Of a stretch of 64,000 nucleotides of DNA, positions 5,599 through 60,128 are shown piece by piece. Position numbers and translations under genes: made by a program. How positions within the stretch are numbered: the first letter of the stretch is position 1; every line of letters starts with the position of its first letter. A model generated the notes under the pieces. It did no database searches, was not told the DNA's origin, and saw only the letters and a program-made list of their open reading frames with translations. The stretch lies in contig OY740788.1 in NCBI GenBank assembly GCA_963514005.1, forward strand, positions 88,226,001 through 88,290,000, read 5' to 3'. This DNA comes from Raja brachyura. Lineage: Eukaryota.

Positions 5599-5704
5599 CT
5601 GAAGAGTCTGAAGAAGGGTCCCGACCCAAAACATCGCCTATCTCCTTCGCTCCTTAGATGCTGCTGCACCCGCTGAATTTCTCCAGCTTTTTGTGTAACC
5701 CCCC
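5599..5704 (+). mobile_element. Short Penelope pseudo-LTR insertion into ERV gag with 20-bp TSD
   Basis: CCTTTCATAGTACCATCCTT is repeated at 5579-5598 and 5705-5724. The insert matches the 3' end of the Penelope element at 47340-47435. Confidence 0.85.
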
Positions 5705-6494: not shown

Positions 6495-6512
6495 ATCCTG
6501 CCGACTACACCA
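6495..6512 (-). promoter_or_regulatory. Retroviral primer-binding site, tRNA-Ser
   Basis: Minus strand TGGTGTAGTCGGCAGGAT, 1 nt from the LTR end. Complementary (17/18) to the vertebrate tRNA-Ser 3' end ATCCTGCCGACTACGCCA. Confidence 0.85.
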
Positions 6513-6513
6513 A

Positions 6514-7191: not shown

Positions 7192-7251
7192 GTGTAATGT
7201 ATTATTAACTAGAATATTCTCAAGGGCTCTGGGACTGGCTTAGAAGAAACA

Positions 7252-8246: not shown

Positions 8247-10865
8247 TGATCACCTGTGTTCATGCCCTCTCTCAGGCTGACAGTTCATTGTTCATTGATC
8301 TGTCATTGCTCATCTGCATTGTGTTGATGCGGGCCCCTAATCCACGTTAAATAGTGGGAAGCACGGTTGAAATTGCCCCTCAATATCATTTCCATGTTCC
8401 AGTGAAGTAGATAACTCATTGCACCATCGGCAGTAAAGGAAAGATAAGAATCCGACACAAAGGCAGAAGAATAGGGTTGGTGTAATTACAGAGTCAACGT
8501 GGATGTATGAAATGGACATCATGGGTGAGTAATCTTTTAAAGCTCACGTTCTTAGATGTTTGTGACGAGCATAGTAGGGTTGTGTTTGTCAATGAGCCAT
8601 GCGGAGACAGTAGCTGTAGACGAGATCGACCATTATTCATCACAAGCAGACACATAGATGGGAGAATCTCCTGGAGGAACTGGAATGAACAGCAGGTATT
8701 CAAGCTGTGAGGCTGTGACTAGTGAGAGGTGGTGCAGGGTTTGGTGCTGGGACCCTCACTGTTCACAATCGAGGATGAGGAGACCAAGTATAACATATCC
8801 TGGTTAGTTGGTAGGTGATGCAACATGTGAGGAGCTGCAGGGGGCACAGACAAGTATAAAGAGCAGGACAAGCCAGAAGGTTTATAATTTGGAAAAATAT
8901 AGTCATTCACTTCTGTTGGAAAAATGGACATGCAAAGCATTTTTTTAAATGTTGTGAGACTGTAAGGTCAGAAGAATCTGGGTGTTCTCATGCATAAAAT
9001 AACTTAAAATCAACATGTAGATAGAAAGTAAATCTGAAGTAAAATAGTAAGATTAAATGAGAACTTACCAGTTTGAAGCTTGATCTTTATTTTATGAGGA
9101 GTTATGGTGAGCGATTACGTGAAGAAGCCCCGCGAGTGCGCATGCGCGTCAATCACAGTAACTACAGTTGAAGTGATATAGTAAGACTCAGAAGACTAGA
9201 ACTACCAGATGATCTTTGCGATCATGAGGGCCGGGGGCGAGGGCACGTAATCGCTCACCGTAACCCCTCATAAAATAAATATCAAACTTCAAACTGGTAA
9301 GTTCTCGTTTAATCTTACTATTTTACTTCGGAGTCAAGTGAGTGATTCCGTGAAGATTTCAAAGCTCTGTGATTTCATGCCGTAGATCCAGTTCCATACA
9401 ACACACTGCTTCGGTTGACACAGGATAAACAAATAATGTATTGAACATTGCTTAAATTATACAATGAATGTTTTTAATAATAAAAGAACAGTAATAACCC
9501 CTCTCTCCCAGGAGGAAATTATAAAACAGAACTGTTTGTACTGACACCTTTCTATTAGTTTTTTTGTGGCTGATAAGCATTGCTGTTTCGGAGCCTCTGA
9601 GACACTTGGTGACCTCAACATATTGACGGAGGTGCATAACTACACATAGTCTCAGGTCAATGGGGTATGCTTTAAAGCTTACTTTGGTTCCAGACGTTCC
9701 TGGACTGCTTTGTTTGATTAGATCGTATACATAAAATGTATTATTATCTACAGACTAATGCATGCTGTCCAATCGTAGCTTTTGCAATGTCTGGACCCGT
9801 TGCCCTGAAACCAGCGCCATGAGCATGACCACTTTGAGCGTTAGCTTCTGGAAAGACAGAGATGTAATTGGAGCTCATTGCCGAAGCAGTGTGAGAGCTA
9901 TGCTCACATCCCAGATTTCCGTATATCTAGGTCTGGGAGGGTTTTTGGGAGGGTTTTTGGGAGGGTCATGAATCGGGACACCAATGGATGAGATCCGACA
10001 GAGCATTGTCCCAAGTCCTGCCATAAATAGGAGGACAAAGCACTTCGAGCACTATTAATGCTACTATAGCTCAGTTGCTCATCAAAATGCAATGTAGCAA
10101 GGAACTCCAATACATCAGGTATGCCTGCAGTATGATAACATATATTTGACTGTAAGCAGAACATCTCCCATTTCTTAAGACAAGATACATATTGTTTTTG
10201 AGTACTATCTCTCCAGGCCGCAGTAATCACATCCACGGTCCTACTCGACAGCCCGGGCCCCTGGAACGGTCAGGTCAGAATCTCCAAATCAACAGATTAA
10301 TACGATCATGTAAAGGGTGACATTCTCCTGTCGTAGGGTGAACCAACAAGTTGCTGCATTTGGGGATAGTCATTAATGGCTGTGTCATCAGTCTCAGAAC
10401 CAATGGGAACCATGGCTGTGTGGGCCAGTCAGGAACTACCAAAATGCCTGAAGCGGAATCCTGCTCTATTTTGGTGAGACATTGACTGATGAGGCGGGAT
10501 GGGGGCAAAGCGTAAAAGAACGCACCTCCCCAATGTAGCGAGAATGCATCCACCGCTACTGCCCCTGGATCCGGTTCCCATGAGACGTATTTAGGTAACT
10601 GGTGATTTAACCTGGATGCAAACAGATCTATGTCTGGCAATCCATACCAGATGACAATCTTTTTGAAAACTTTTGGATTCAGCATCCATTCTGTGTTGTC
10701 ATTAAATTTACATGACCTGGTGTCTGCCACCACGTTAGCTCTACCTGGTAGGTAGGTAGCTGAGACCCAGAGGTTTCTCACAGTACACCAGTGCCAGATG
10801 AGGTTAGTCAGATTATCACATGATAATGACTTAATTCCACCATGTGATTAATATATGCAACTGCT

Positions 10866-13800
10866 TGGAATGGTCTTATCTGTTTTCGGTCATGGAAACT
10901 TTTAAGTTGGGAGAGAAGTTTATATCATGGGTTAAATTATTATATGCGAATCCAACAGCTAGAATATTAACAAATCAAATGTTATCAACTAAATTTAATT
11001 TATCCCGAGGCTGTAGACAAGGTTGTCCCTTATCCCCACTACTGTTCGCACTTGCAATTGAACCATTAGCTCAAAGCGTGAGATTACATCCTGAAATATA
11101 TAGGTACGAAACTAGAGAAACTGAAAATAAAATCTCCTTATATGCTGATGATGTACTACTTTATATTACAAAACCGGAAATTAGTATTTTAAATTTATTA
11201 AATTTAATAACTGAATTTGGTTTGTTTTCAGGATATAGTATTAATTGGAATAAAAGTGAACTTATGCCAATAAAGGTAAATAATCTACATACATTACAAC
11301 AATATCCTTTTAAGATAGCAAAAGAAAAAATAAAATATCTCGGAATTCATGTAACAAAAAGATATGATTCTTTATTTAAATCTAATTTCCCACCATTACT
11401 GAATAAACTAAATAAGAATATTTTATATTGGAAAACATTACCTATCTCAATGTTAGGTAGAATTAATGCAATAAAAATGATTTTTCTTCCACAAATACTA
11501 TATCTTTGCCAATTGATACCAATATACCTTCCTAAAAACTTTTTAAAAAAAAGTTGACTCTATAGTCACCAATTTTATCTGGGAATATAAGAGTCATAGA
11601 ATAAATAAAAAACACTTATGTAAATCAAAAATAAATGGAGGTCTAGCATTGCCAAATTTTATGTTTTATTACTGGGCAGTTAGTATTAAAAATATGAATT
11701 TTTGGCTGATGAATTAGATAAACAACCAAATTGGTTAAAAATGGAAAAAGAAGATTGTACACCTTTTGACATTAGCACGATTTTATTCGCCAATGCTAAA
11801 CTAGCTAAGAAAACCCATAAAAAAACCCTACAATAGAGAGTGGGATACGTATCTGGAAACAACTTAAGAAAACATTAAAATTGCAATGTATATCACTAGC
11901 TCTCCCCATTGTAAACAATGTCACATTTAGAAACATAGAAACATAGAAAAATAGGTGCAGGAGTAGGCCATTCGGCCCATTCAATGTGATCATGGCTGAT
12001 CATCCAACTCAGTATCCCGTACCTGCCTTCTCTCCATACCCCCTGATCCCTTTAGCCACAAGTGCCACATCTAACGCCCTCTTAAATATAGCCAATGAAC
12101 TGGCCTCAACTACCTTCTGTGGCAGAGAATTCCAGAGACTCACCACTCTCTGTGTAAAGAATGTTTTCCTCATCTCGGTCCTAAAGGAATTCCCCCTTAT
12201 CCTTAGACTGTGACCCCTTGTTCTGGACTCCCCCAACATCGGGAACAATCTTCCAGCATCTAGCTTGTCCAATCCCTTAAGAATTTTGTAAGTTTCTATA
12301 AGATCCCCCCTCAATCTTCTAAATTCCAGCGAGTACAAGCCGAGTCTATCCAATCTTTCCTCATATGAAAGTCCTGCCATCCCAGGAATCAGTCTGGTGA
12401 ACCTTCTCTGTACCCCCTCTATGGCAAGGATGTCTTTCCTCAGATTTGGAGACCAAAACTGTACGCAATACTCCAGGTGTGGCCTCACCAAAACCCTGTA
12501 CAACTGCAGTAGAACCTCCCTGCTCCTATACTCAAATCCTTTCGCTATGAATGCTAACATACCATTTGCTTTCTTCACTGCCTGCTGCACCTGCATGCCT
12601 ACTTTCAATGACTGGTGTACCATGACACCCAGGTCTCGTTGCATCTCCCCTTTTCCTAATTTGCCACCATTCAGATAATAGTCTACCCTCATGTTTTTGC
12701 CACCAAAGTGGATAACCTCACATTTATCCACATTATACTGCATCTGCCATGCATCTGCCCATTCACTCAGCCTATTCAAATCACCCTGCAGCCTCCAAGC
12801 ATCCTCCTCACACCTAACTATACCATCCAGCTTGGTGTCATCTGCAAATTTGGAGATGTTGCATTGAATTCCCTCGTCCAAATCATTAATATATATTGTA
12901 AATAGCTGGGGTCCCAGCACTGAGCCTTGCGGTACCCCACTAGTCACTGCCTGCCATTCTGAAAAGGACCCGTTTACTCCTACCCTTTGCCTCCTGTCTG
13001 CTAGAAAGTTCTCTATCCACATCAATACTGAACCCCCAATACCGTGTGCTTTAAGTTTATATGCTAATCTCTTATGCGGGACCTTGTCGACAGCCTTCTG
13101 AAAGTCTAGATATAACACATCCACTGGTTCTCCCTTATCCACTCTACTAGTTACATCCTCGAAAAATTCTATCAGATTTGTCAGACATGATTTACCTTTC
13201 GTAAATCCATGCTGACTTTGTCCAATGATTTCACCACTTTCCAAATGCGCTGCTATCCCATCTTTAATAACTGACTCTAGCAGTTTCCCCACTACCGATG
13301 TTAGACTAACTGGTCTGCCAATCCTCAGGAACTACTCCAGAATCTAAGGAATTTTGAAAAATTATCACTAATGCATCCACTATTTCTGTGGCTACCTCCT
13401 TGAGTACTCTGGGATGCAGACTCTCTGGCCCTGGGGATTTATCGGCCTTCAATCTGTTCAATTTACCCAACACCACCTCCCGGCTAACCTGGATTTCACT
13501 CAGTTCCTCCATCTTATTTGACCCCCGTTCCACTGCTATTTCCGGCAGATTATTTATGTCTTCCTTAGTGAAGACAGAACCAAAGTAGTTATTCAATTGG
13601 TCTGCCATGTCCTAGTTCGCCATGATCAATTCACCTGTTTCTGACTGCAAGGGACCAACATTTGTTTTAACTAGTCTCTTCCTCTTCACATATCTATAAA
13701 AAGCTTTTGCAGTCAGTTTTTATGTTCCCTGCCAGTTTCCTTTCATAATCTATTTTCCCTTTCCTAATTAAGCCCTTTGTCCTCCTCTGCTGGACTCTGA

Positions 13801-14998
13801 ATTTCTCCCAGTCCTTCAATGATAGATAAAGGCTTTTCACAATGGAAAAATTATGGAATTAATAGGATGGGTGATCTTTACAGGGAAAACCCCTTTCTTT
13901 CATTTCAAGAACTACAACAAATTTATGGATTACATTCAAAAGATTATTTTAGATATTTACAAATCAGAGACTATGTAAAATCAAACACACAGGAAATTAG
14001 AAATAGAAAGGCAGAAATTTTAGATGAATGTCTAAATAAACATCCAAATACAAATCCAAATTGATATCATATATTTATAATATTTTATTAGAAAATGATG
14101 TACCAATGACAGAAACATATAGGCAATCATGGGAAAACGAATTAGGTCAAACAATTAGACCAGAAATATGGAATGAAAGTTTACAAAATATACATCATTG
14201 TTCGTTAAATGCTAGACACATCTTGATACAATTTAAAGTACTACATAGATTACATTATTCCAAATCAAAATTACATAGAATATTTTCAAATATACCAGCC
14301 ATATGTGATAAATGTCAATATTTAGAAGCTAATCTAACCCACTCATTCACAAACTGTATAAAAATTACGACCTTTTGGGCAGATATTTTTAAGATAATCT
14401 CGAATGTTGTTAATACAAATTTGTTACCTGACTCAAAATTAATAATATTAGGAATATTAGAAACAGATCAATTAATAACAATAAATCAAAGAATTTTTAT
14501 TGATTACAGTTTAATAATTGGGAAAAAACTTATATTGAAATTTTGGAAGGGTCCTACATCCCCCACAATTAAAATGTGGATCACTGAAATGTCGGAGACA
14601 CTTCATCTTGAAAGATTAAGAGTTATCCTTCTGGGCAAGTTGGATCAATTCAGAGGAATATGGTCTCCATTTATTGAATATTTAAAGGGTCAAAGTGGTT
14701 CGGTGCAAGAACCTGACTGATGCCTGAACGAAGAAATAGACGAAGATTTACATATAATAACCCATGGATATATCTCCAATGATGTACAAACTGCTTAATA
14801 CTTCATTCATTTTTCTGAATCTCTATCTTTATTTTATTTTTCTCTTATATTTCCTATCTATATAAAAAATGAAAAACTCATAGAAGTACAAATTAGAAAT
14901 AATTGTTAATATTAATAATATTAAGAATGTATATGACATGTATATCCTTATCTTGATATGTACTTCTAATAAAAAATATTTAACAAAAAAAAAATTAA
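10866..14998 (+). mobile_element. 5'-truncated L1/Tx1-clade LINE with 17-bp TSD
   Basis: RT motifs RGCRQGCPLSP and YADD; C-terminal C-x2-C-x8-H-x4-C knuckle; AATAAA and A-tail. TAATATATGCAACTGCT at 10849-10865 and 14999-15015. Confidence 0.93.
11928..13814 (-). mobile_element. 5'-truncated CR1 LINE nested in the L1
   Basis: 427-aa RT ORF 12009-13292 and (TTTCTATG)n tail. The L1 reading frame resumes on both sides. Confidence 0.95.
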
Positions 14999-15759
14999 TA
15001 ATATATGCAACTGCTGTGGTATTGTCAATCTGGAGCTGAACATGTAAATCATGCACTGTTGAGCAGTATGCTTTAAGGCTATAGAATGCACCCAGCAATT
15101 CTAAGTAGTTTATCCCATGCATCTGCAGGATTAATGCCTCTTGCATATTCCATCTGCCGCCACAGCTAGACTCGGTATCGGTGGCTCCCCATCCCGAAGC
15201 ACTCACATCAGTTTGTAAAATAACTGAAGGTTGTTTAGTCAGAATGTCTCTAGAACCTCGTGAGACATTAGTTATCCATCATTGTAACTCGGTGATAGCT
15301 TCGACTGGCAACTGCATTTGTGTATCAAAATGACCATCATTCCACGACTGGAACCAGTCTTCTTTGGCTATGCCTCTCCAAGGTCTTAGCCTTCTTCACT
15401 TCGATTAAATGTTCTGTCCCACTCTCTGGGACTGGTATTTAACCCCCCCCCCCCCGCCGGAGGTTCCCTTCTACTTAATGTGGCAACAGATTATCATGTG
15501 ATTCCGAAGTAATATGAGCAGTTTAGAAGGCAAACAATATATTAAAAAACAAAAGGCACAAGTTGTTGGAGTAACTTGAAAGGTCAGCCAGCAAGTCCGG
15601 AGAACATGTGTAAATCTGACATCCTCGATAATCTTACTCTTCAATTATCCTGAGCCTCACTGGGAAGTATGTGATGGTATTCAAATTTTAGAAACTGTTA
15701 CACACTAAATGCTGGAGAAATATGATGCCTTCCATTGAGCTTTACGTATATTCACACAG

Positions 15760-16107
15760 ATCCCCTGGATGATCCGGTCCTTATCCAGTCTCCGTCAGTC
15801 AGCAAGGTGGCAGAGGGTGTAACTGTGCAGTTGCAATGTGCCTTGCACAATGCCGGTGTGAATGACACTGACGTCCACTGGAACCAGCAGCGACCTGGGA
15901 AAAACAGCGAGTGGGTAATGAGCCACTTTGTGGATGGCAACGTCACCAGGTCCGGCCGTATCTCTGACCGCTTTAAGTCTTTCAGGAATGCCATGAGCAA
16001 CAGTTACATTCTGACCATTGCCAATGTCTCCATCAATGATACTGCTGTCTACAACTGCAGTGTGTGGAGTTACATCTATGGAGCAGGGTCCCAGCTCAAT
16101 GTAACTG
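15760..16107 (+). CDS. Exon: Ig V-set domain with germline-joined J-like strand (VJ-type receptor, domain 1 in window)
   Basis: Acceptor CACACAG| and donor |GTAAGT, both phase 1. Encodes LQC (Cys B), VHWNQQRPG (Trp C), RF, YILTI, DTAVYNC (Cys F) and YGAGSQLNVT (FGxG-type J motif). Six N-x-S/T sequons. Confidence 0.93.
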
Positions 16108-21707: not shown

Positions 21708-21796
21708 ATGCAAATCCTTCAATCCTGATCCAATTCCCGAGTCTGGAGAGTGTCACTGATGATGACACGGCATGGTTACGGTGCTCCATGGAGAAC
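21708..21796 (+). pseudogene. Truncated second Ig V exon (pseudo-exon)
   Basis: Phase-1 acceptor TTTTCCCATTAAAG|. DANPSILIQFPSLESVTDDDTAWLRCSMEN aligns with domain 1 (DPLDDPVLIQSPSVSKVAEGVTVQLQCALHN), then runs into an antisense CR1 tail. The rest of the domain was not found. Confidence 0.8.
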
Positions 21797-21985
21797 ATAG
21801 AAAATAGGTGCAGGAGGAGGCCATTTGGCACTTCGAGCCTGCACCGCCATTCAGTGTGATCATGGCTGATCATCCACAATCAATAATCCGTGCCTTTCTT
21901 TTCCCCATATCCCTTGATTCCGCTGGCCCCTAGAGATCTAACTCTCTTTTAAATCCATCCAGTGAATTGGCCTCTACTGCCTCTA
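21793..21985 (-). mobile_element. CR1 3'-end fragment at the breakpoint of Ig exon 2
   Basis: CATAGAAAATAGGTGCAGGAGGAGGCCATT matches the reverse complement of the CR1 tails elsewhere in the window. Confidence 0.9.
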
Positions 21986-24731: not shown

Positions 24732-24866
24732 TTTTTGCAATGAAGGAGAATCAAGGTGTGGTGATGTACCTTGCCTGGATCATTCTGCCTTTGGTGCTGG
24801 GAGTTCTTGCTGTTACTGGAGCCGTTTGCCTCATCAGACGCAGAGCTTCTGGAAGCCACCAGTCCT
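24732..24866 (+). CDS. Exon: stalk + transmembrane + basic stop-transfer
   Basis: TTTCTTTGCAG| ... |GTATGT, phase 1/1. Encodes (V)FAMKENQG-VVMYLAWIILPLVLGVLAVTGAVCLI-RRRASGSHQS. No charged TM residue. Confidence 0.9.
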
Positions 24867-25033
24867 GTATGTGTAACTAAATAATTCAGTCTGATCTGAT
24901 TACTGTGTGGACTTAATGAAATTGGAAGGGCTGGATCCGATTGTCAAAGAGCTGTCATTATGCTGTTGGGCAGCAAAGTGGGATTCACAGCCCCGAGGCT
25001 GCTCTTTGTGAGACCTTGTTCTCTGTTTCACAG

Positions 25034-25107
25034 CCCAGTCCGGAGCGGCCGATGACCAGACCCCAGGAGCAGTTTATGAAAACATTTCCGTGACAAGAAA
25101 TGTCCCG
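25034..25107 (+). CDS. Exon: cytoplasmic 1 with tyrosine motif AVYENI
   Basis: CTCTGTTTCACAG| ... |GTGAGT, phase 1/0. Encodes (S)QSGAADDQTPGAVYENISVTRNVP. Confidence 0.88.
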
Positions 25108-25999: not shown

Positions 26000-26640
26000 C
26001 GTCCGACAGCCCACCCGACCCCTCACACCACTCACCGGCCCACCAACTGCCCGCCCGACCCCTCACACCACTCACCGGCCCACCGACTGCCCGACCGACC
26101 CCTCGCACCACTCACCGGCCCACCGACTGCCCGCCCGACCCCTCACACCACTCACCGGCCCACCGACTGCCCGACCGACCCCTCACACCACTCACCGGCC
26201 CACCGACTGCCCGCCCGACCCTTCACACCACTCACCGGCCCACCGACTGCCCGACCGACCCCTTGCACCACTCATCGGCCCACCGACTGCCCGACCGACC
26301 CCTCGCACCACTCACCGGCCCACCAACTGCCCACCCGACCCCTCGCACCACTCACCACTCACCGGCCCACCAACTGCCCACCCGACCCCTCGCACCACTC
26401 ACCACTCACCAGCCCACCGACTGCCCGACCGACCCCTCGCACCACTCACCGGCCCACCAACTGCCCGACCCCTTGCAGAACTCACCGGCCTCACAACTGC
26501 CCGACCCCTCGCACCACTCACCGGCCCACCGACTGCCCAACCGACCCCTCGCAGAACTCACCGGCCCACCGACTGCCCGACCGACCCCTCGCACCACTCA
26601 CCGGCCCACCGACTGCCTGACCGACCCCTCGCAGCATCCA
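26000..26640. repeat. C-rich 40-bp minisatellite (CCCACCGACTGCCCGACCGACCCCTCGCACCACTCACCGG)n
   Basis: About 15 tandem units, followed by (GACCATGACCCA)n at ~26715-26762. Confidence 0.95.
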
Positions 26641-27090: not shown

Positions 27091-30000
27091 TAACCATATA
27101 ACATATAACCATATAACAATTACAGCACGGAAACAGGCCATCTCGGCCCTTCAAGTCCGTGCCGAACAACTTTTTTCCCTTAGTCCCACCTGCCTGCACT
27201 CATACCATAACCCTCCGTACCCTTCTCATCCATATGCCTATCCAATTTATTTTTAAATGATACCAACGAACCTGCCGCCACCACTTCCACTGGAAGCTCA
27301 TTCCACACCGCTACCACTCTCCGAGTAAAGAAGTTCCCCCTCATGTTACCCCTAAACCTCTGTCCCTTAATTCTAAAGTCATGTCCTCTTGTTTGAATCT
27401 TCCCTATTCTCAAAGGGAAAAGCTTGTCCACATCAACTCTGTCTATCCCTCTCATCATTTTAAAGACCTCTATCAAGTCCCCCCTTAACCTTCTGCGCTC
27501 CAGAGAATAAAGACCTAACTTATTCAACCTATCTCTGTAACTTAGCTGTTGAAACCCAGGCAACATTCTAGTAAATCTCCTCTGTACCCTCTCTATTTTG
27601 TTGACATCCTTCCTATAATTGGGCGACCAAAATTGTACACCATACTCCAGATTTGGTCTCACCAACGCCTTGTACAATTTTAACATTACATCCCAGCTTC
27701 TATACTCAATGCTCTGATTTATAAAGGCTAGCATACCAAAAGCTTTCTTTACCACCCTATCTATATGAGATTCTACCTTCAAGGAACTATGCACGGTTAT
27801 TCCCAGATCCCTCTGTTCAACTGTATTCTTCAATTCCCTACCGTTTACCATGTACGTCCTATTTTGATTTGTCCTGCCAAGGTGTAGCACCTCACATTTA
27901 TCAGCATTAAACTCCATCTGCCATATTTCAGCCCATTTTTCCAACTGGCCTAAATCACTCTGTAGACTTTGGAAATCCTCTTCATTATCCACAACACCCC
28001 CTATCTTGGTATCATCTGCATACTTACTAATCCAATTTACCACCACTTCATCCAGATCATTGATGTACATGACAAACAACAAAGGACCCAACACAGATCC
28101 CTGAGGCACCCCACTAGTCACCTGCCTCCAACCCGACAAACAGCCGTCCACCATTACCCTCTGGCTTCTCCCATTCAGCCACTGTTGAATCCATCTTGCT
28201 ATTCCTGCATTTATACCCAACAGTTGAACCTTCTTAACCAACCTTCCATGAGGAACCTTGTCAAAGGCCTTACTGAAGTCCATATAGACAACATCCACTG
28301 CTTTACCCTCGTCAATTTCCCTAGTAACCTCTTCAAAAAATTCAAGAAGATTAGTCAAACATGACCTTCCAGGCATAAATCCATATTGACTGTTCCTAAT
28401 TAGACCCTCTTTATCCGGATACTTATATATATTATCTCTAAGTAGCTTTTCCATTAATTTGCCCACCACTGAAGTCAAACTAACCGGTCTATAATTGCTA
28501 GGTTTACTTTTAGAACCCTTTTTAAACAATGGAACAACATGCGCAGTACGCCAATCCTCGGGGACTATTCCAGTTTCTAATGACATTTGAAATATTTCTG
28601 TCATAGCCCCGGCTATTTCTACACTAACTTCCCTCAATGTCCTAGGGAATATCCTGTCAGGACCTGGAGACTTATCCACTTTTATATTTTTCAAAAGTGC
28701 CAGTACTTCTTTTACTTTGAAACTCATAGTATCCATAGCTACTCTACTAGTTTCCCTTACCTCACATAATTCAATATCCTTCTCCTTGGTGAATACCGAA
28801 GAAAAGAAATTGTTCAATATCTCCCCCATCTCTTTTGGCTCTGCAGATAGCTGTCCACTCGATCTCTCCAATGGACCAATTTTATCCCTTGTTATCCTTT
28901 TGCTATTAACATAGCTGTAGAAACCCTTTGGATTTACTTTCACCTTACTTGCCAAAGCAACCTCATATCTTCTTTTAGCTTTTCTAATTTCTTTCTTTAG
29001 ATTCTTTTTACATTCCTTATACTCCTCAAGCACCTCATTTACTTCATGCTGCCTATAATTATTGTAGATCTCCCTCTTTTTCCGAACAAGATGTCCAATT
29101 TCCCTTGAAAACCAGGGCTCTTTCCAATTTTTACTGGTTCCTTTCAACCGAACAGGAACATAAAGATTTTGTACTCTTAAAATTTCCCCTTTAAATGTCC
29201 TCCATTTCTCCCCTACATCTTTCCCATCAAACAAAATGTCCCAGTTCACTCCTTTTAAATCATCTCGCATCTCGTTAAAGTTAGCCTTTCTCCAATCAAA
29301 AATCTCAACCCTAGGCCCAGTTCTGTCCTTCTCCATAATTATATTGAAACTAATGGTATTGTGATCACTGGACCCAAAGTGCTCCCCTACGCATACCTCC
29401 GCCACCTGTCCCGTCTCATTTCCTAACAGGAGGTCCAGCACTGCCCCTCCTCTAGTAGGCACCTCTATGTATTGATGCAAAAAACTATCCTGCACACATT
29501 TTACAAACTCCAAACCATCCAGCCCATTTACAGAATGTGTTTCCCAGTCTATGTGTGGAAAGTTGAAATCTCCCACAATCACTACCTTGTGCTTACTACT
29601 AATATCTGCTATCTCTTTACATATTTGCTCTTCCAATTCTCGTTCCCCATTTGGCGGTCTATAATATACCCCTATAAGTGTTGCTACACCTTTCCCACTT
29701 CTAAGTTCCACCCAAATAGCCTCCCTAGATGAGCCCTCCAATCTATCCTGCCAAAGCACTGCTGTAATATCTTCCCTGACTAGCAATGCAACACCTCCAC
29801 CTCTTGCCCCTCCAATTCTATCACACCTGAAGCAACGAAATCCTGGAATATTTAGTTTCCAATCACAGCCCTCCTGCAACCATGTTTCACTGATCGCCAC
29901 AACATCATACTTCCAGGTGTCTATCCAGACTCTAAGCTCATCCACCTTTCTTACAATGCTCCTAGCATTAAAATATGCACATTTAAGAAACCCCCCATCT

Positions 30001-30440
30001 CTTATTCTCTGTTTATTTCCTTTTTTTTCTTTCTCCTCTTGTGTCCGAGTGCTTCCCTTTTCTGCTTCCTGCCTCCCATTCTGTCTACTAGCTTTTGCTA
30101 TTTGCATCCCTCGCCCCAACCATTCTAGTTTAAAGTCTCCCCAGTGGCCTTCGCAAATTTCCCCGCCAGGATATTGGTCCCCCTCGGGTTCAAGTGCAAC
30201 CCATCCTTTCTGTACAGGTCCCACCTACCCCAAAAGAAGTCCCAATGATCCAGATACTTGAATCCCTGCCCTCTGCACCAGTCTTTCAGCCAAGCATTTA
30301 TCCTCCACCTCGCTCCATTTCTACTCTCACTGTCACGTGGCACAGGCAGTAATCCTGAGATTGTTACCTTTTTGGTCCTTTTCCTCAACTCTCCTCCCAA
30401 GTCCTTAAATCCTCCCTTCAGGACCTCTTCTCTTTTTTTG
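27091..30440 (-). mobile_element. CR1 LINE (second subfamily, (ATATGGTT)n tail) with open ORF2 and the 3' end of the ORF1 esterase
   Basis: 1014-aa ORF 27180-30224 (FNARS, GDFN, SDH, YADD). ORF 30125-30400 with DGLHL. Confidence 0.97.
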
Positions 30441-31579: not shown

Positions 31580-31621
31580 AAGTCAGGAGATCACCAGGCA
31601 GATCCAAACGCCACCTACATG
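31580..31621 (+). CDS. Exon: cytoplasmic 2, first part of ITAM
   Basis: TTGTGTTGCAG| ... |GTGAGA, phase 0/0, 42 nt. Encodes KSGDHQADPNATYM. Confidence 0.87.
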
Positions 31622-31711
31622 GTGAGAAAAGTCACATTTAGTACGTTGAAGCGTTTCGCTGACCACGAGTTGCTAAGCTGCTGTTTCTAACATTTCTTTG
31701 TTTTCTACTAG

Positions 31712-31753
31712 GATTTGCAAAGACCCACTCAGTCCATCTACGGTCATCTCTGA
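31712..31753 (+). CDS. Exon: cytoplasmic 3, completes ITAM and stop
   Basis: Long pyrimidine tract ending TTTTCTACTAG|, phase 0. Encodes DLQRPTQSIYGHL*. A donor-like G|GTACGT lies 1 nt after the TGA. Confidence 0.87.
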   Translation, partial: DLQRPTQSIYGHL

Positions 31754-32186
31754 GGTACGTTCCAGTAACTGTTGACAATGGCACATCTGCACCATATGAT
31801 ATCTGTCAACTGCTGCAGTAATGGTGAGGATTCAGACAGGAACGACAAGCATGGAGATGGGCCGACAGGAGTTCAGTCTGACTACAAGTTTGGTTCAGAG
31901 AGTAAATTAACACCCGTCACTGAGTTGGATTATCTGGCTATGAACACGCATCCTTGTAATCCTGGTAACACTGAGTATTTAATCTGGATGAAGGGACCAG
32001 AGCAAGTTAATTTCTAATCCATTATCCCACCTTGGTTTCAGATATTGTCTCTGACATTTCCAACAAAAGCTGTTCCATGAATTGTTGGGGATTGGACGAT
32101 AGTGATCAAGATGAAACTCGCATTCCCTGACCACATCCTTCAGTGATCAGTCACTGTGATATCAGAGACAGGGCATCTGTCACTAA

Positions 32187-32745
32187 AGGGCCTGTCCTAC
32201 AAGCATGCAACTCCATGCGATTAGCGCGACCTAACGTGGTCGCTTGAGCCGTCCGGCGTCGCGGGGCCGGTCCCACTTCGATCGCCGGAGCCGTGCGGAG
32301 TTCGTCCCGACATCGCGCGGGGCTCCGAAAAACTGACCATGTTCGAAAATTCCGCGCGGCAGCGGCTTGTCGGCTCGCAGTCGCCTCGACGCATTACACA
32401 CCGCCTCGACATCGTGCCTCCATGAACCAATCTGTAGGTGACTCCGTGACCCTCTATGTGTGTGGCTCCATGGCCCTCTGTGTGTGTGTGCCTCTGTGCC
32501 CCTCTCTGTGTGCCCCTCTCTGTCCTGGCGAACTTACCTTAGACTTCGCTCCAAGTTCACCTCACTATGCGCCGCGTTGTGCCACACACCCGACCTCTGC
32601 GCAGTCCTCGCTGCCGGTTTGGTCGCGCTTGGCGCATGCAGGTGGGAACGGCCCTGTACAGGGGATCACCCGACCTCCGCGTGGCACCCGCTTCTAGTTT
32701 CATCGTGCTAATCGCATAGAGTTGCATGCTTGTAGGACAGGCCCT
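32187..32745. mobile_element. PIF/Harbinger-type MITE with TAA TSD
   Basis: ~42-bp TIR AGGGCCTGTCCTACAAGCATGCAACTCYATGCGATTAGCRCGA. TAA at 32184-32186 and 32746-32748. Confidence 0.9.
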
Positions 32746-32924
32746 TAAGCAAGAACTCAACCTTATTCTTACCTTAATTACCGTCAGGGTGAAGCAGGGT
32801 TCATTTCTTTCAGCAAATTCACAAGACTCAAATTGCCTTCAGTTTGGGAGGAGAAAGTGGGGTCGTACTGAAGTGTTTTTGATTTTAATGGGATCTCTAT
32901 AGAAACTTAGAACACAGAAACATA

Positions 32925-34251
32925 CAGTGCATTCAGAAAGTATTCAGAACCCTTCACTTTTTCCACATTTTGTTACGTGACAGCCTTATTCTAAAATTGA
33001 TTCAATTCATTTCTTTATCATCAATCTACACACAATATCCCAAAATAAAAAAGCAAAACGGGTGTTTAGAAATGTTGACAGTAATTAAAGAGAAATAACT
33101 GAAATATCACATTTACATAAGTATTCAGACCCTTTACTCAGTACTTTGTTGAGGCACCTTTGGCAGCGATTACAGCCTCAAGTCTTCTTGGGTATGATGC
33201 TACAAGCTTGGCACACCTGTATTTGGGTAATTTCTCCCATTCTCCTCTGCAGATCCTCTCAAGCTCTGTCAGGTTGGATGGGGAGCATCAATGCACAGCT
33301 ATTTTCAGGTCCCTCCAGAGATGTTCGATCGGGTTCAAGTCCGGGCTCTGGCTGGGTCACTCAAGGACATTCACAGACTTGTCACAAAGCCACTCCTGCG
33401 TTGTCTTGGCTGTGTGCTTAGTGTCATTGTCCTGTTGGAAGGTGAACCTCCGCCCCAGTTTGAGGTCCAGAACACTTTGGAGCAGGTTTTCATCAAGGAT
33501 ATCTCTGTACTTTGCTCCATTCATCTTTCCATCGATCCTGACTGAGGAGTGGCTTCAGTCTGGCCAATCTACCATATTGTTGGACTGCTGCAGATATAGT
33601 TGTCCTTCTGGAAGGTTCTTCCATCTCCACAGAGGATCTCTGGAGCTGTCAGAGTGACCATCGGGTTCTTGGTCACCTCCCTGACCAAGGCCCTTCCCGC
33701 CCGATTGTTCAGTTTGGCCGGGCAGCCAGTTCTATGAAGAGTCCTGCTGGTTCCAAAGTTAAGAATGACGGAGGCCACTGTGTTCTTCAGGACCTGCAAT
33801 GCTGCAGAATTTGTTTTATAACCTTCCCAGATCTGTGTCTCGACACAATCCTGTCTCGGAGGTCTACGGACAATTTCTTGGTCTTCATGGCTTGGTTTTT
33901 GCTCTGACCTATTGTTAACTGTGTGTCCTTATATAGACAGGTGTGTGCCTTTCCAAATCATGTCCAATCAATTTAATTTACCACTGGTGGACTCCAATCA
34001 AGTTGCAGAAACATCTCAAGGTATTATCAATGGAAACAGGATGAACCTGAGCTCAATTTTGAGTGTCATAGTGAGTCTGAATACTTATGTAAGTGTGATA
34101 TTTCAGTTATTTATTTTTAATTACTTTGCAAAAATTTCTAAACACCTGTATTTGCTTCTTTATTCTGGGATGTTGTGTGTAGATTGATGATAAACAAAAA
34201 GAAAAAAGTGTGGAAAAAGTGAAGGGGTCTGAATATTTACGGAATGCACTA
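32925..34251 (-). mobile_element. Tc1-family (IR/DR type) DNA transposon with a defective transposase
   Basis: TA|CAGTGCATTCAGAAAGTATTCAG ... GAATGCACTA|TA with ~210-bp TIRs and internal direct repeats. Transposase starts MKTKKLSVDLRDRIV at ~33889 on the minus strand, with frameshifts and an internal deletion near 33545. Confidence 0.92.
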
Positions 34252-36154: not shown

Positions 36155-36600
36155 GCAGCAAACAAGCGTCCCACAGCTGAACTGTCTGGGCATCCTCGTT
36201 TAGGTGAAGGAAGATTGGATGATATCTGCACAGTCCCAGAGGTTCCATTCGCTTTATGTATGACCCAAGAGATGTTTATTGGATGGAACATTTGGGATAT
36301 GTGCATCAAGAAAAATCATCCCTTTCCACATCATTCTCCCATTGATAAAAGTATAGGAACAATAAGTGACATCTACATTGAAGCTGGCTGATTGGATGGC
36401 ATGTATCAGCTAGCTAGTTGCCTCCCAAAGTAAGATAGGAATTTGAAGACAATCAAGTATATGGAGACTTTGCAATGGTTGTATAGACTTCCTCAAGTTA
36501 TAGTTTACTGCTTTAAAATATTGCATTGATTGTTCAAATTGTTCAACTGCTTGAATATAGATGTTGCAGCTTTCTAATAAACATGCAGCTTAAACTGTGA
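36155..36600 (+). other. Candidate non-coding terminal (3' UTR) exon of the ITAM receptor gene
   Basis: Acceptor TTTAATTTTCTTTAAACAG| in non-repetitive sequence and AATAAA at 36576-36581. Would pair with the donor at 31755. Confidence 0.45.
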
Positions 36601-47337: not shown

Positions 47338-50300
47338 GGGTACACAAAAGGCTGGAGAAACTCAGCGGGTGCAGCAGCATCTAAGGAGCGAAGGAGATAG
47401 GCGACGTTTCGGGTCGAGACCCTTCTTCAGACTGGTCAGGGATCAGGGAAACTAGAGATATAGACAGTGATGTGGAGAGATAAAGAACAATGAATGAAAG
47501 ATATGCAAAAAAGTATCGATGATAAAGGAAACAGGCCATTGTAAGATGTATGTGGTGTGAAAATGAGAAGCTAGTGCGACTTGGGTGGGGGAGAGATAGA
47601 GAGAGAGGGAATGCCAGGGCCCGAGGGCTGAGGGAGAGGTGGGAAGGGGAGGAGACAGCAAGTGTTAACCGAATTGAGAAAATTCAATGTTTAAGCACAG
47701 AGGAAGCAGACTCCCCAAGCGGAATATGAGGTGCTGTTCCTCCAACTTGCGGTGTTGCTCACTCTGGCCGTGGAGGAGGCCCAGGACCGAGAGGTCGGAT
47801 ACGGAATGGGAGGGGGAGTTGAAGTACTGAGTAACCGGGAGGTCGGGTTGGTTATTGCGGACCGAACGGAGGTGTTCGGCGAAACGATCGCCAAGCCTCC
47901 ACTTGGTCTCACCGATATAGATCAGCTGGCATCTGGAGCAGCGAATGCAGTAGATGAGGTTGGAGGAGGTGCAGGTGAACCTCTGTCGGACCTGGAAGGA
48001 CTGCTTGGGTCCCTGAAAGGAGTGGAGGGGGGAGCTGAAGGGACAAGTGTAGCATCTCTTGCGGTTGCAAGGGAAAGTGCCCGGGGAAGGGGTGGAGCGG
48101 GAGGGAAGGGAAGAATTGACAAGGGAGTTGCGGAGGGAGCGGTCTTTGCGGAAGGCAGACAGGGGGGGAGATGGGAAGATGTGGCGAGTGGAGGGGTCAC
48201 GCTGGAGGTGGCGAAACTGGTGGAGGACTATGTATATGCCGGCTGGTGGGGTGAAAGGTGAGGACCAGGGGGACTCTGCCCTTGTTGTGGGTGGGGGATG
48301 GGGAGAGAGGGCAGTGTTGCGGGGTGTGGAGGAGACCCTGGTGCGAGCCTCATCTATAGTGGGGGAGGGGAATCCCCGTTCTCTGAAGAACGAGGACATT
48401 TGTGATGACCTGGTGTGGAACACCTCATCCTGGGAGCAGATGCGGCGTAGACGGAGGAATAGGGGATGGAGTCCTTACAGGAAGCAGGGTGGGAGGAAGA
48501 GTAGTCCAGGTAGCTGTGGGAGTCAGTGGGTTTCTAGTGGATGTCGGTCAGGAGCGTATCACCACCAATAGAGATGGTGAGGTCAAGGAATGGTAGCGAG
48601 GAAGGAGGGGGTTCTTGGGAGACAGGAATAGGGATCATCAGTCAGGGGCGAGGACCTGTTCCCGTGGAAGAACGCTGTGAGGCGGAGGCGACGGTAGAAG
48701 AGCTCCAAGTCATGGTGGGCCCGGAACTCATTGAGGTGGGGACGGAGGGGGACAAAGGTAAGACCTCTGCTGAGGACCGACCTTTCGGTGACGGAGAGGG
48801 GGAGGTCCGGGGGATGGTGAACACGCGGCAGGGATGGGGGTTGTGGCCGGAGGACGGTAGGTGAGTGGACTGAGGACGGAGCGTTGTGTGGTGGGGGGGT
48901 AGAGGGTGGTCAGGGGGTGGGGGGGGATGGGGGCTGTGGTTTAGGTGGGGAAGAGCAGGGGTTACATGGTGGGGGGGGGATGGGGAAGACCCAGTGGAAT
49001 AGCCACTGAGGTCACTGGGGCTGGGGAGACGGGCACTAGGACCCAGTGCCGTTACAAACAGAGTGGTGGGAGGAGTGAGCAACGTGGAGGCTTCAGGCCC
49101 GCTGCAGAGTCCAGTCTGTAGGTGAGGCGACGGCTGCGGGCTGCTGGAGGGCGGTGGAATGTCGCGGGTCGGCGGGCGGGCCCGAAGGTAGGAATCCGCG
49201 GGCAGTGGAGTGTCGCGGGTCGGCGGGCGATGCTGGGTGGTCCCGGTGGGCGGGTGGTCGGTGTGGCGGCGGCAAGGTTCAGCCCGCCCGGTGAGTGGGG
49301 CCCGGTACACGGGCGATGCTGGGTGGGCCCGGTACACGGGCGATGCTGGGTGGGCCCGGTACACGGGCGATGCTGGGTGGGCCCGGTACACGGGCGATGC
49401 TGGGTGGGCCCGGTACACCGGCAATGCTGGGTGGGCCCGGTACACCGGCGATGCTGGGTGGGCCCGGTACACCGGTGATGCTGGGTGGGTGGGCCCGGTA
49501 CACCGGCGATGCTGGGTGGGCCCGGTACACCGGCGATGCTCTGTGGGCCCGGTACACCGGCGATGCTGGGTGGGCCCGGTACACCGGCAATGCTGGGTGG
49601 GCCCGGTACACCGGCGATGCTGGGTGGGCCCGGTACACCGGCGATGCTGGGTGGGCCCGGTACACCGGTGATGCTGGGTGGGTGGGCCCGGTACACCGGC
49701 GATGCTGGGTGGGCCCGGTACACCGGCGATGCTGGGTGGGCCCGGTACACCGGCAATGCTGGGTGGGTGGGCCCGGTACACGGGCGATGCTGGGTGGGCC
49801 CGGTACACCGGCGATGCTGGGTGGGCCCGGTACACCGGTGATGCTGGGTGGGTGGGCCCGGTACACCGGCGATGCTGGGTGGGCCCGGTACACCGGCGAT
49901 GCTCTGTGGGCCCGGTACACCGGCGATGCTGGGTGGGCCCGGTACACCGGCGATGCTGGGTGGGCCCGGTACACGGGCGATGCTCCGGTACACCGGCGAT
50001 GCTGGGTGGGTGGGCCCGGTACACGGGCGATGCTGGGTGGGCCCGGTACACGGGCGATGCTGGGTGGGCCCGGTACACCGGCGATGCTGGGTGGGCCCGG
50101 TACACCGGCGATGCTGGGTGGGCCCGGTACACCGGCGATGCTGGGTGGATGGGCCCGGTACACGGGCGATGCTGGGTGGGCCCGGTACACGGGCGATGCT
50201 GGGTGGGCCCGGTACACCGGCAATGCTGGGTGGGCCCGGTACACCGGCGATGCTGGGTGGGCCCGGTACACCGGCGATGCTGGGTGGGCCCGGTACACTG

Positions 50301-50905
50301 GTGATGCTGGGTGGGTGGGCCCGGTACACCGGCGATGCTGGGTGGGCCCGGTACACCGGCAATGCTGGGTGGGTGGGCCCGGTACACGGGCGATGCTGGG
50401 TGGGCCCGGTACACCAGCGATGCTGGGTGGGCCCGGTACACCGGTGATGCTGGGTGGGTGGGCCCGGTACACCGGCGATGCTGGGTGGGCCCGGTACACC
50501 GGCGATGCTGGGTGGGTGGGCCCGGTACAGGGGCGATGCTGGGTGGGCCCGGTACACCGGCGATGCTGGGTGGGCCCGGTACACCGGCGATGCTGGGTGG
50601 GCCCGGTACACGGGCGATGCTCCGGTACACCGGCGATGCTGGGTGGGCCCGGTACACCGGCGATGAGGTTGGGGGGTCCCGGGGGGCGGCGAGGTTCGGC
50701 GGTCGCGTTGTGCTGGTGATTGGCGGTGGAATCGGGGAGGGGGAGATAAACAGAGTTACCGGGCGGGCGGGCGGGCAGCGGGACTGGGCGGCATCGGTAG
50801 GCGGGTGGAGGTCGGTGAAGGCGGCGTCCTGGAGGCGCTCCTTGTGGCCAACATGGCGTCGGGGGGCTCGGGCCAGAGTTGGGGCCTGGGGCCTGCGGGC
50901 GTCAT
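47338..50905 (-). mobile_element. Penelope-like element: GIY-YIG endonuclease and pLTR, RT core deleted, GC-rich 5' part with minisatellite
   Basis: ORF 47665-48423 NLIYCIRC..C..YIGET..RFAEH..LEEQHLI...LN. RT N-terminal motif (LSRGLTFVP frame) at ~48640-48830. Confidence 0.9.
49296..50665. repeat. 27-bp GC-rich minisatellite (GCCCGGTACACCGGCGATGCTGGGTGG)n, about 50 units
   Basis: Direct reading; 31-bp (+GGGT) and shortened variants are interspersed. Confidence 0.97.
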
Positions 50906-60079: not shown

Positions 60080-60128
60080 ATGTTTGCACTGATATTCTCC
60101 ACCTTGACTCTGTCCCTCTGTGCAGTGG
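60080..60128 (+). CDS. Signal-peptide (leader) exon of a further secreted or membrane protein gene, probably Ig superfamily
   Basis: ACAACATG start; MFALIFSTLTLSLCAV(G); 49 coding nt; phase-1 donor G|GTAAGT; unique sequence with upstream Ets-type GGAA sites. Confidence 0.72.

What the first reader, a model, noticed from the sequence alone, without database searches (positions are those of the whole stretch)
31580..31753. ITAM is split by a phase-0 intron at the Yx|xL position typical of FcRgamma and DAP12
Seen: a 90-nt intron (31622-31711) falls between ATYM and DLQRPTQSIYGHL, giving YMDL-x7-YGHL with upstream Asp residues. Established: FcRgamma (GVYT|GL) and DAP12 (SPYQ|EL) ITAMs are interrupted at the same position and phase. 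Inference: the motif is homologous to the classical two-exon ITAM cassette rather than a chance match. It was either shuffled onto a VJ ectodomain or retained from a common ancestor.
Basis: partly seen in the sequence, partly recalled or inferred. Interest (0 to 1): 0.8.

Follow-up and report, generated by a model that had tools for sequence, protein, structure and literature searches.

The report
Split ITAM tail, skate VJ receptor
The flagged motif is a real, conserved activation motif (ITAM) in the tail of a shark-and-ray antibody-like receptor gene; an intron cuts it at the usual place, which is the known hallmark of such motifs and not a new feature, and this skate copy may be decaying.

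Summary
Exon A (31580-31621) encodes KSGDHQADPNATYM. A 90-nt GT..AG intron follows. Exon B (from 31712) encodes DLQRPTQSIYGHL. Together they form a canonical ITAM cut Yx|xL in phase 0.

The bare motif is common by chance. The full signature occurs once in the window and in none of 60 simulated windows.

The two exons are the 3rd and 4th of a phase-consistent TM-plus-tail set behind a VJ-type V exon. The same tail (YENx, then ITAM) occurs in predicted tandem-V receptors of at least 11 shark and ray species. Both tyrosines are invariant, and alternative gene models break at exactly these exon borders.

Published work already states that classical ITAMs are always split this way, including receptor-borne ITAMs (CEACAM, G6f-like). 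So this is a new member of a known kind. The nearest relative of the tail is a CEACAM/PSG-like receptor of the horn shark, which favours shuffling of a signalling cassette.

Corrections: exon B is an internal 43-nt exon. This copy has TGA directly after the ITAM. A last mini-exon lies at 36155.

No RNA evidence was obtained. This copy also has a truncated second V exon and no leader in the window. The scan found this family before on other DNA (s1-880903).

The parts
15760..16107 (+). V1 exon: antigen-receptor-like V domain with a germline-joined J-like end (YGAGSQLNVT), phase 1-1
   Evidence: Acceptor cacag| and donor G|gtaagt. Pfam V-set 9e-16. Best solved relatives are antibody V regions. 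70-71% identical to a V domain of stingray family members and 91-94% identical to skate ones.
21708..21797 (+). Remnant of a second V exon, cut off after ...LRCSMEN by an inserted repeat
   Evidence: Homology to the family's DANPP(I/V)LIQ... V domain stops at about 21797, and no donor or rest of the domain follows.
24732..24866 (+). Transmembrane exon (phase 1-1). The membrane span is uncharged and is followed by RRRASGSHQS.
   Evidence: 60-78% identical to stingray TM exons and 91% identical to thorny-skate P0053. Donor T|gtatgt.
25034..25107 (+). Cytoplasmic exon 1 (74 nt, phase 1-0) carrying a Grb2-type YENI motif
   Evidence: QSGAADDQTPGAVYENISVTRNVP. Acceptor tttcacag| and donor CCG|gtgagt. 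Bamboo-shark isoforms that skip the TM exon start at the same place (LCVT|AQSGAADD).
31580..31621 (+). ITAM exon A (42 nt, phase 0-0), ending ...NATYM
   Evidence: A bamboo-shark model lacks exactly the homologous 14 codons, and a catshark model has them twice.
31622..31711 (+). 90-nt phase-0 intron that cuts the first YxxL as Yx|xL
   Evidence: gtgaga...ttctaac...ttttctactag. It is the only full-signature hit in the window.
31712..31754 (+). ITAM exon B (43 nt, phase 0-1): DLQRPTQSIYGHL, then TGA (31751-31753), then G|gtacgt
   Evidence: Relatives read L-(Q/K)-(G/A) across this border.
36155..36180 (+). Candidate last coding exon, (G)SKQASHS plus stop. It is not translated in this copy because of the upstream TGA. 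The first AATAAA is at 36576.
   Evidence: Strong acceptor ttctgtttaattttctttaaacag|. It matches sawfish GHKQTSDS* and horn-shark GNKQTADS*. It is the only 1 of 8267 AG-preceded phase-1 positions in the window that fits G.KQ...S*.
27180..30224 (-). LINE with an intact 1014-aa endonuclease/RT ORF, inserted in the 6.5-kb intron between cytoplasmic exon 1 and ITAM exon A

Best explanation
The two exons are the genuine ITAM-coding exons of a member of an elasmobranch family of non-rearranging tandem-V(J) surface receptors.

The signalling end of the gene is a cassette of five exons:
- a TM exon;
- cytoplasmic exon 1, carrying a YxN (Grb2-type) motif;
- a 42-nt exon ending Y-x;
- a 43-nt exon starting x-L and holding the second YxxL;
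- a mini last exon.

This layout, with a phase-0 cut inside the first YxxL, is the published hallmark of classical ITAMs. It matches most closely the four-exon YxNx-plus-ITAM tails of activating CEACAM-type receptors.

Inferred mechanism: ligand binding by the V domains clusters the receptor. Src-family kinases then phosphorylate the two ITAM tyrosines, a Syk/ZAP-70-type kinase docks through its tandem SH2 domains, and the YENx site can recruit Grb2. No adaptor chain is needed, because the TM has no charged residue.

The family also has members with ITIM/ITSM-like tails on near-identical V domains, so these are paired receptors whose TM-plus-tail cassettes are exchanged as units.

This copy keeps every tail exon open and in phase. 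It is nevertheless probably a weakened or decaying gene: the second V exon is truncated, a stop falls directly after the ITAM, no leader lies within 15.7 kb upstream, and no RNA was seen.
For: Shown directly:
- Splice signals and phases of all six exons agree (1-1, 1-1, 1-0, 0-0, 0-1, then last).
- The full signature is unique in the window and absent from 60 simulated windows.
- Stingray, manta, sawfish and five shark genera have predicted proteins with V(J)n-TM-...YEN(V/I)...(N/S/D)xTY(M/T)xLQ..QS(I/V)YxxL(Q/K) tails.
- Exon borders show up in alternative models. P0051 lacks exactly the 14 codons of exon A. P0072 has them twice. P0070 lacks them. P0011 diverges after TYM. P0061 lacks the TLQ that follows TYT. 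P0010 and P0018 diverge after L-Q/K. P0020, P0021 and P0087 skip the TM exon at the same junctions as in the window. P0012 reads into the same intron sequence (VSSD...).
- The tail of horn-shark 'PSG22-like' P0016 aligns to the family tail better than the ectodomains align to each other (BLASTP 3e-07). It shares 8-12 of 32 non-motif residues at a fixed register, and 0 of 20000 shuffles reach that score.
- A V1-like domain 91% identical to the window's is joined to an inhibitory tail in two skates.

From the literature:
- PMC4536121, PMC2110893, PMC2832619 and PMC5112662 describe the split, phase 0, four small cytoplasmic exons, YxNx plus ITAM, and TM and tail exchanged together.
- PMC3528668 describes a YxN-plus-split-ITAM tail on G6f-like that signals through its ITAM tyrosines.
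Against: - No RNA evidence for this copy. No RNA run holds the stretch, and the four runs laid gave only genomic or repeat contigs, with none spliced.
- None of six skate family proteins in the database carries the ITAM tail. The thorny-skate model P0053 ends by read-through of the TM-exon donor.
- This copy has a truncated V2 exon, a TGA right after the second YxxL, and no leader in the window.
- Homology to adaptor ITAMs (FcR-gamma, DAP12, CD3, CD79) rests on the motif plus one intron position. Profile and peptide searches of solved chains found none of them.
- Signalling is entirely inferred.
Confidence: 0.72

Rival explanations
1. The cassette is evolutionarily real, but this copy is a pseudogene or relic that makes no working receptor. 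The intact-looking ITAM exons are then simply too young to have decayed.
For: - The V2 exon is cut by a repeat.
- TGA replaces the family's Gln/Lys codon right after the ITAM.
- No leader or further V exon lies in the 15.7 kb upstream.
- No RNA holder was found.
- No skate protein with an ITAM tail is in the database, and the thorny-skate model stops in the TM exon.
- An earlier scan note calls neighbouring copies damaged (s1-880903, unchecked).
Against: - All five retained coding exons (V1, TM, cytoplasmic exon 1, ITAM exons A and B) and the mini last exon are open, in phase and have good splice sites.
- 12 of 13 residues of exon B are identical to stingrays.
- V exons are phase 1-1, so skipping the remnant keeps the frame, and V1-to-TM joins occur naturally in stingray members (P0003, P0005, P0008).
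- The stop lies 4 nt before the last junction, so no nonsense-mediated decay is expected, and the ITAM itself is complete.
- Leader and upstream V exons may lie just before the window (s1-880768, unchecked).
Confidence: 0.4
2. Chance: a YxxL-x7-YxxL match in non-coding DNA that happens to be flanked by GT and AG.
For: Bare split-ITAM matches occur 16-18 times per strand in this window.
Against: - The full signature is unique here and absent from 60 simulated windows.
- The peptides of both exons match the tails of relatives in at least 11 species, far beyond the motif.
- The phases fit the upstream exons.
Confidence: 0.02
3. Convergence: the ITAM arose within this receptor family (or within CEACAM-like tails) independently of the adaptor ITAMs, and the shared intron position is a coincidence or a by-product of very short cytoplasmic exons.
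For: - No sequence similarity to adaptor chains beyond the motif.
- The tails are built of 14-25-codon exons, so an intron inside a 15-codon motif is likely in itself.
Against: - Exact position and phase would match by chance only about 1 in 50 times (my estimate).
- The literature reports the same split in every classical ITAM examined.
Confidence: 0.1
4. Retention: a VJ domain with its own ITAM is the ancestral state, a relic of a pre-rearrangement antigen receptor that signalled by itself, and was not produced by later shuffling.
For: - The V domain is antigen-receptor-like with a J motif.
- The family is spread over sharks and batoids.
Against: - The same tail sits on a CEACAM/PSG-like ectodomain.
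- Near-identical V domains carry inhibitory tails. This is the pattern of cassette exchange described for CEACAMs.
- No members outside elasmobranchs were found.
Confidence: 0.08

Closest known systems
Classical ITAM of the signalling adaptors (FcR-gamma, DAP12, CD3 chains, CD79a/b, TCR-zeta)
   Same: The consensus D/E/N-x-x-Y-x-x-L/I-x7-Y-x-x-L/I. The motif is coded by two exons, with the border inside the first tyrosine module (PMC4536121).
   Different: The adaptors have tiny or single-Ig ectodomains and an acidic TM residue for pairing with a ligand-binding chain. Here the ITAM is on the ligand-binding chain itself and the TM is uncharged. No similarity beyond the motif was detected.
Activating CEACAM-type tails (human CEACAM3/4, dog CEACAM23-30, Xenopus Ceacams; horn-shark 'PSG22-like' XP_067874551)
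   Same: - The ITAM is receptor-borne.
- The tail is made of four very short cytoplasmic exons.
- A YxNx Grb2-type site lies upstream of an ITAM cut by a phase-0 intron.
- They are paired with ITIM/ITSM forms, and TM and tail are exchanged as a unit.
- There is significant tail similarity to the horn-shark member, with the same 23-residue YEN-to-ITAM spacing.
   Different: The ectodomain here is an antigen-receptor-like V domain with the canonical disulfide and a J motif, in tandem copies. It is not a CEACAM N domain plus C2 domains.
Teleost G6f-like (thrombocyte collagen receptor)
   Same: An Ig receptor whose own tail has a YxN Grb2 site and an ITAM 'split over two exons'. Signalling was shown to need both ITAM tyrosines (PMC3528668).
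   Different: It has four Ig domains of another type and is a bony-fish, MHC-linked lineage. I did not test any sequence relation to it here.
Hagfish NICIR/ALA, and teleost NITR and NILT
   Same: V-domain innate receptors with ITAM or ITIM tails encoded in multigene families (PMC3634110; PMC3022915).
   Different: NICIR has V plus C domains and two ITAMs. NITR and NILT are teleost families with other domain sets. None was recovered as a sequence relative of this tail.
Elasmobranch UrIg/UrIg2
   Same: Non-rearranging, germline-joined V genes of sharks and rays (PMC12227049).
   Different: UrIg2 is V-C1-C2-C3. The paper does not mention an ITAM (0 occurrences). The family here is tandem V only, with ITAM or ITIM tails.

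Membership tests
Classical (two-exon) ITAM | Consensus D/E/N-x-x-Y-x-x-L/I-(x)7-Y-x-x-L/I (PMC4536121) | tested here: met
   N-A-T-Y-M | D-L, seven residues (QRPTQSI), then Y-G-H-L.
Classical (two-exon) ITAM | Coded by two exons, with the border inside the first tyrosine module | tested here: met
   In the DNA, donor ATG|gtgaga and acceptor ctactag|GAT, with a 90-nt intron. The same border is implied in manta, bamboo shark, epaulette shark and catshark by alternative models. No RNA is available for this copy.
Classical (two-exon) ITAM | The intron is in phase 0 (PMC2110893, PMC2832619, PMC5112662) | tested here: met
   Exon A is 14 whole codons. Its frame is fixed by the phase-0 end of cytoplasmic exon 1.
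Classical (two-exon) ITAM | Lies in a cytoplasmic tail behind a membrane span | tested here: met
   The TM exon is 24732-24866, upstream on the same strand, and the phases are consistent. Homologues have TM followed by the tail.
Classical (two-exon) ITAM | Both tyrosines are phosphorylated and bind the tandem SH2 domains of Syk/ZAP-70 | not testable with these tools
   Inferred only. It has been shown for the analogous G6f-like tail (PMC3528668).
ITAM adaptor subunits (FcR-gamma / DAP12 / CD3 / CD79) | Acidic residue in the TM for assembly with a receptor chain | tested here: not met
   The TM exon peptide ...VVMYLAWIILPLVLGVLAVTGAVCLI... has no Asp or Glu in the membrane span.
ITAM adaptor subunits (FcR-gamma / DAP12 / CD3 / CD79) | Sequence similarity of the tail beyond the motif | tested here: not met
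   A profile and a peptide search of all solved chains at E up to 10 returned no ITAM adaptor. This is a weak test for so short a region.
CEACAM-type activating tail | Four short cytoplasmic exons, with a YxNx site and an ITAM near the C-terminus | tested here: met
   Exons of 74 nt (YENI), 42 nt, 43 nt and a last exon of 8 codons, as against the descriptions.
CEACAM-type activating tail | CEACAM N-type ectodomain | tested here: not met
   The window's V exon is antibody-V-like with a J motif. So the tail is of this type but the gene is not a CEACAM.
Elasmobranch tandem-VJ paired receptors (unnamed; NCBI 'uncharacterized protein', 'Ig kappa light chain-like' and similar) | Tandem VJ domains, a TM, and either a YEN-plus-ITAM tail or an ITIM/ITSM-like tail | tested here: met
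   V1 is 70-94% identical to family V domains. The TM, cytoplasmic exon 1 and the ITAM exons all match. The domain count of this copy is uncertain because its 5' end was not found.

The most novel reading that the evidence does not exclude
The TM + YxN + split-ITAM + mini-exon tail is one ancient, mobile signalling cassette. It was already moving between unrelated Ig-receptor families (CEACAM-like and antigen-receptor-like VJ receptors) in early jawed vertebrates. Self-signalling VJ receptors of this kind would then be surviving relatives of the non-rearranging precursor of antigen receptors. In some species one locus may even yield activating and inhibitory forms by choosing between cassettes.
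Probability: 0.1. Interest if true: 0.7.

Novelty: new member of a known kind. Interest (0 to 1): 0.4.

Why it matters
The intron cut is a useful authenticity mark. It shows that this is a classical ITAM and not a look-alike. It therefore identifies an adaptor-independent activating arm in a large family of antibody-like V-domain receptors of sharks and rays, a family I could not find described in the searchable literature.

The tail's likeness to CEACAM-type activating tails gives a concrete, testable case of signalling-cassette exchange between receptor families at the base of jawed vertebrates.

In itself, the split is what any specialist would expect of a genuine ITAM.

Tried and rejected
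Exon borders in other species could therefore only be inferred from differences between protein models.
- RNA evidence: the run search found no RNA holder. Laying X1, X2, X19 and X21 gave only genomic or repeat contigs and no spliced piece.
I used the literature instead.
- dN/dS of the two exons could not be computed, because no homologous nucleotide sequences were obtainable.
- A profile search of the tail against solved structures, a peptide search, and the protein atlas all gave noise only.
- A leader exon for this gene was not found in window positions 1-15760.
- All searches used single exons or database proteins.
- Rejected reading: that exon B is the terminal coding exon by design. Relatives continue across a phase-1 border.

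Full report
**1. What is in the sequence**

At the flagged place the + strand reads ...ttgtgttgcag|AAG TCA ... TAC ATG|gtgaga ... ttctaac ... ttttctactag|GAT TTG ... GGT CAT CTC TGA G|gtacgt.
- Exon A (31580-31621) translates to KSGDHQADPNATYM.
- Exon B (from 31712) translates to DLQRPTQSIYGHL followed by a stop.
- The intron is 90 nt, GT..AG, in phase 0, and lies between the second and third residue of the first YxxL.
- The spacing is seven residues, Asn sits at -3 of the first Tyr, and two Asp residues lie further upstream.

**2. Is it more than chance?**

The bare pattern is not. When only GT..AG and the motif are required, I found 16 and 18 split ITAMs on the two strands of this window. 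The complete signature requires:
- D/E/N-x-x-Y-x followed by a GTRAG donor;
- a pyrimidine-rich acceptor;
- x-L/I-x7-YxxL/I;
- an intron of 70-1000 nt.

That signature occurs only here, and in none of 60 Markov-1 simulated windows. The stronger argument comes from context and relatives.

**3. The gene around it**

On the same strand and upstream lie the following parts.
- A V-set exon, 15760-16107, phase 1-1. It scores Pfam V-set 9e-16, looks most like antibody V regions, and ends in the J-like YGAGSQLNVT.
- A remnant of a second V exon from 21708, cut off after ...LRCSMEN by an inserted repeat.
- A TM exon, 24732-24866, phase 1-1, with an uncharged membrane span.
- A 74-nt cytoplasmic exon, 25034-25107, phase 1-0, encoding QSGAADDQTPGAVYENISVTRNVP.

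Its phase-0 end fits exon A, so all phases agree. A LINE with an intact ORF sits on the other strand inside the 6.5-kb intron.

Exon B is followed, one base after its TGA, by a good donor. 4.4 kb further on, a strong acceptor opens (G)SKQASHS-stop. This is the only one of 8267 AG-preceded phase-1 positions in the window that fits G.KQ...S-stop. It matches the C-termini GHKQTSDS (sawfish) and GNKQTADS (horn shark).

Exon B is therefore an internal 43-nt exon in this family. In this copy the codon after the ITAM leucine, which is Gln or Lys in relatives, is TGA.

I found no leader exon for this gene in the 15.7 kb upstream. A leader at 60080-60130 belongs to the next family member and is identical to that of thorny-skate LOC116976517.

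**4. Relatives**

The V exon alone found a stingray protein and a horn-shark protein. Their tails read ...ADYENV/I...TYMALQR..QSIY..L plus about ten residues. A search with the tail, a profile search of 1.84 billion representatives, and a whole-protein search found about 90 elasmobranch proteins. They have one to four tandem V domains and fall into two tail classes.

*Class 1: YEN plus ITAM.* Seen in:
- rays: Hemitrygon, two Mobula species, Hypanus, Pristis;
- sharks: Heterodontus, two Chiloscyllium species, Hemiscyllium, Scyliorhinus, Pristiophorus.

Both tyrosines are invariant in the 17 members I aligned.

*Class 2: ITIM/ITSM-like tails* (...VYATV...YADIQF...TEYAVIKR).

A V1-like domain 91% identical to the window's is joined to the inhibitory tail in little skate and in Rhinoraja. 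This is a paired-receptor family.

All members carry automatic names only ('uncharacterized protein', 'immunoglobulin kappa light chain-like' and the like). I found no paper on the family. The scan met the family before on other DNA of this genome (s1-880903, 71 kb beyond this window).

**5. Exon borders in other species**

I therefore used differences between alternative gene models.
- Bamboo-shark P0051 lacks exactly the 14 codons NSQDFPEDSNATYT, which is exon A skipped.
- Catshark P0072 has that exon twice, and P0070 lacks it.
- Manta P0011 diverges right after TYM.
- Epaulette-shark P0061 lacks the three residues TLQ that follow TYT.
- Hypanus P0010 and bamboo-shark P0018 diverge after L-Q/K, and the next residue always starts with G. 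That is the phase-1 border seen in the window.
- P0020, P0021 and sawfish P0087 skip the TM exon and resume at AQSGAADD or TPPAAAEDQ, the same junction as the window's cytoplasmic exon 1.
- Hemitrygon P0012 reads into the intron as VSSD..., as the window would.

The Yx|xL phase-0 border and the 14-codon exon are therefore conserved from skates to sharks. These are predicted models, not sequenced cDNAs that I could inspect.

**6. What is already known**

- Guselnikov et al. 2015 (PMC4536121) give the consensus D/E/NxxYxxL/I-x7-YxxL/I. [quoted passage not shown]
- Kammerer et al. [quoted passage not shown] They describe very short cytoplasmic exons Cyt1-4, and TM and tail exons 'exchanged together during evolution'.
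- PMC2832619 and PMC5112662 add that the tail has four exons, and that YxNx Grb2-type sites accompany most ITAM-bearing Ceacams.
- Hughes et al. 2012 (PMC3528668) describe teleost G6f-like. [quoted passage not shown]

I did not verify the exact Yx|xL position on the FcR-gamma and DAP12 genes themselves. The split is also the expected property of any genuine classical ITAM, including receptor-borne ones.

**7. Where the tail came from**

The profile search also pulled out two proteins from outside the family.
- Horn-shark 'pregnancy-specific glycoprotein 22-like' (XP_067874551). It has three CEACAM-like V-set domains and the tail ...AAYENF...NSTYMDLKLEDQSIYHDLRK.
- A skink CEACAM-like protein with the tail ...TYENVS...VYETLQHPDQSLYQQLQG....

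Between the horn-shark protein and a bamboo-shark VJ member, the best local alignment is TM plus tail (E 3e-07), not the ectodomains. At a fixed register, with the same 23-residue distance from YEN to the ITAM, the two tails share 8-12 of 32 non-motif residues, and none of 20000 shuffles reaches the score. For the skink tail, p is about 0.001.

The window's tail is built of four cytoplasmic exons (YENI exon, 42 nt, 43 nt, mini-exon), as described for CEACAM activating tails. Taken together with the ITAM/ITIM pairing on near-identical V domains, this favours exchange of a TM-plus-tail cassette between Ig-receptor families. Retention of an ancestral VJ-plus-ITAM chain is less likely.

A specific link to FcR-gamma or DAP12 cannot be shown. 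Searches of all solved chains with the tail profile and with a tail peptide returned no ITAM adaptor, and the TM lacks the adaptors' acidic residue.

**8. Likely mechanism (inferred)**

This is a type I receptor whose V domains bind a ligand. Clustering leads to phosphorylation of the two ITAM tyrosines and docking of a Syk/ZAP-70-type kinase. The YENI site can bring in Grb2. No adaptor chain is needed. Inhibitory sister receptors with like V domains would counterbalance it.

**9. State of this copy**

In favour of function:
- All retained exons are open, in phase and well signalled.
- Exon B is 12 of 13 residues identical to stingrays.
- V exons are phase 1-1, so the remnant can be skipped.
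- V1-to-TM joins exist in stingray members.

Against function:
- The second V exon is truncated.
- TGA ends the protein at the +3 leucine of the second YxxL.
- No leader lies in the window.
- No RNA holder was found, and no spliced contig.
- None of six skate family proteins in the database has the ITAM tail. Thorny-skate P0053 ends by read-through of the TM-exon donor, with the same ...SHQSCMCN-stop ORF as in the window.

In one search:
- Run X19 matched the window with no differences, so it is the same species.
- X19 also held a second contig over 31594-31782 with 18 differences, which is a paralogous cassette.
- Run X21 differed by about 1.4% and lacks 32184-32745.

I put the odds that this copy is non-functional at about 40%.

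**10. Limits**

- There is no transcript evidence and no nucleotide-level selection test.
- Borders in other species come from predicted proteins.

**Verdict**

- the hallmark is generic;
- the tail is CEACAM-like;
- exon B is internal;
- this copy may be decaying.

It is a new member of a known kind, of moderate interest.

Noticed in passing
window 60080-60130 (+): Leader exon MFALIFSTLTLSLCAVG of the next family gene. It is 17/17 identical to the leader of thorny-skate LOC116976517 (P0053). The window is therefore from that skate or a close relative.
   Followed up: partly
window 27180-30224 (-): LINE with an uninterrupted 1014-aa endonuclease/reverse-transcriptase ORF inside the intron between cytoplasmic exon 1 and ITAM exon A. 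It looks young.
   Followed up: no
window 26003-26633 and 49298-50665: Two long tandem arrays. One is a 40-nt unit x 15.6 copies (read as a Pro/Thr-rich ORF) in the same intron. The other is a GC-rich 27-nt unit x about 50 copies.
   Followed up: no
window 32184-32745: A roughly 560-bp stretch of a very high-copy repeat is absent from the contig of run X21 that spans it (31753-32183 joined to 32746-32946). This is an insertion difference between close relatives or haplotypes.
   Followed up: no
window 31594-31782: Run X19 (otherwise identical to the window) holds a second contig over the ITAM cassette with 18 differences in 189 nt. This is a paralogous ITAM cassette elsewhere in the genome.
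   Followed up: no
Mobula hypostoma LOC134350038, proteins P0005 and P0025: Two 'isoforms' share the first 250 residues exactly. One then takes the TM plus ITAM tail. The other takes a further V domain and the inhibitory tail. Either one locus switches between activating and inhibitory cassettes by splicing, or two genes were merged by the predictor.
   Followed up: partly
Amblyraja radiata P0053 versus window 24867-24880: The thorny-skate model ends ...SHQSCMCN-stop by reading through the TM-exon donor, the same ORF as in the window. This hints that tail-less, TM-only transcripts may exist in skates, or that the predictor missed the tiny tail exons.
   Followed up: no
Scyliorhinus canicula P0072, P0070, P0095: Catshark members show the 14-codon ITAM exon A duplicated in tandem or missing. 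This suggests copy-number play of this phase 0-0 exon.
   Followed up: no
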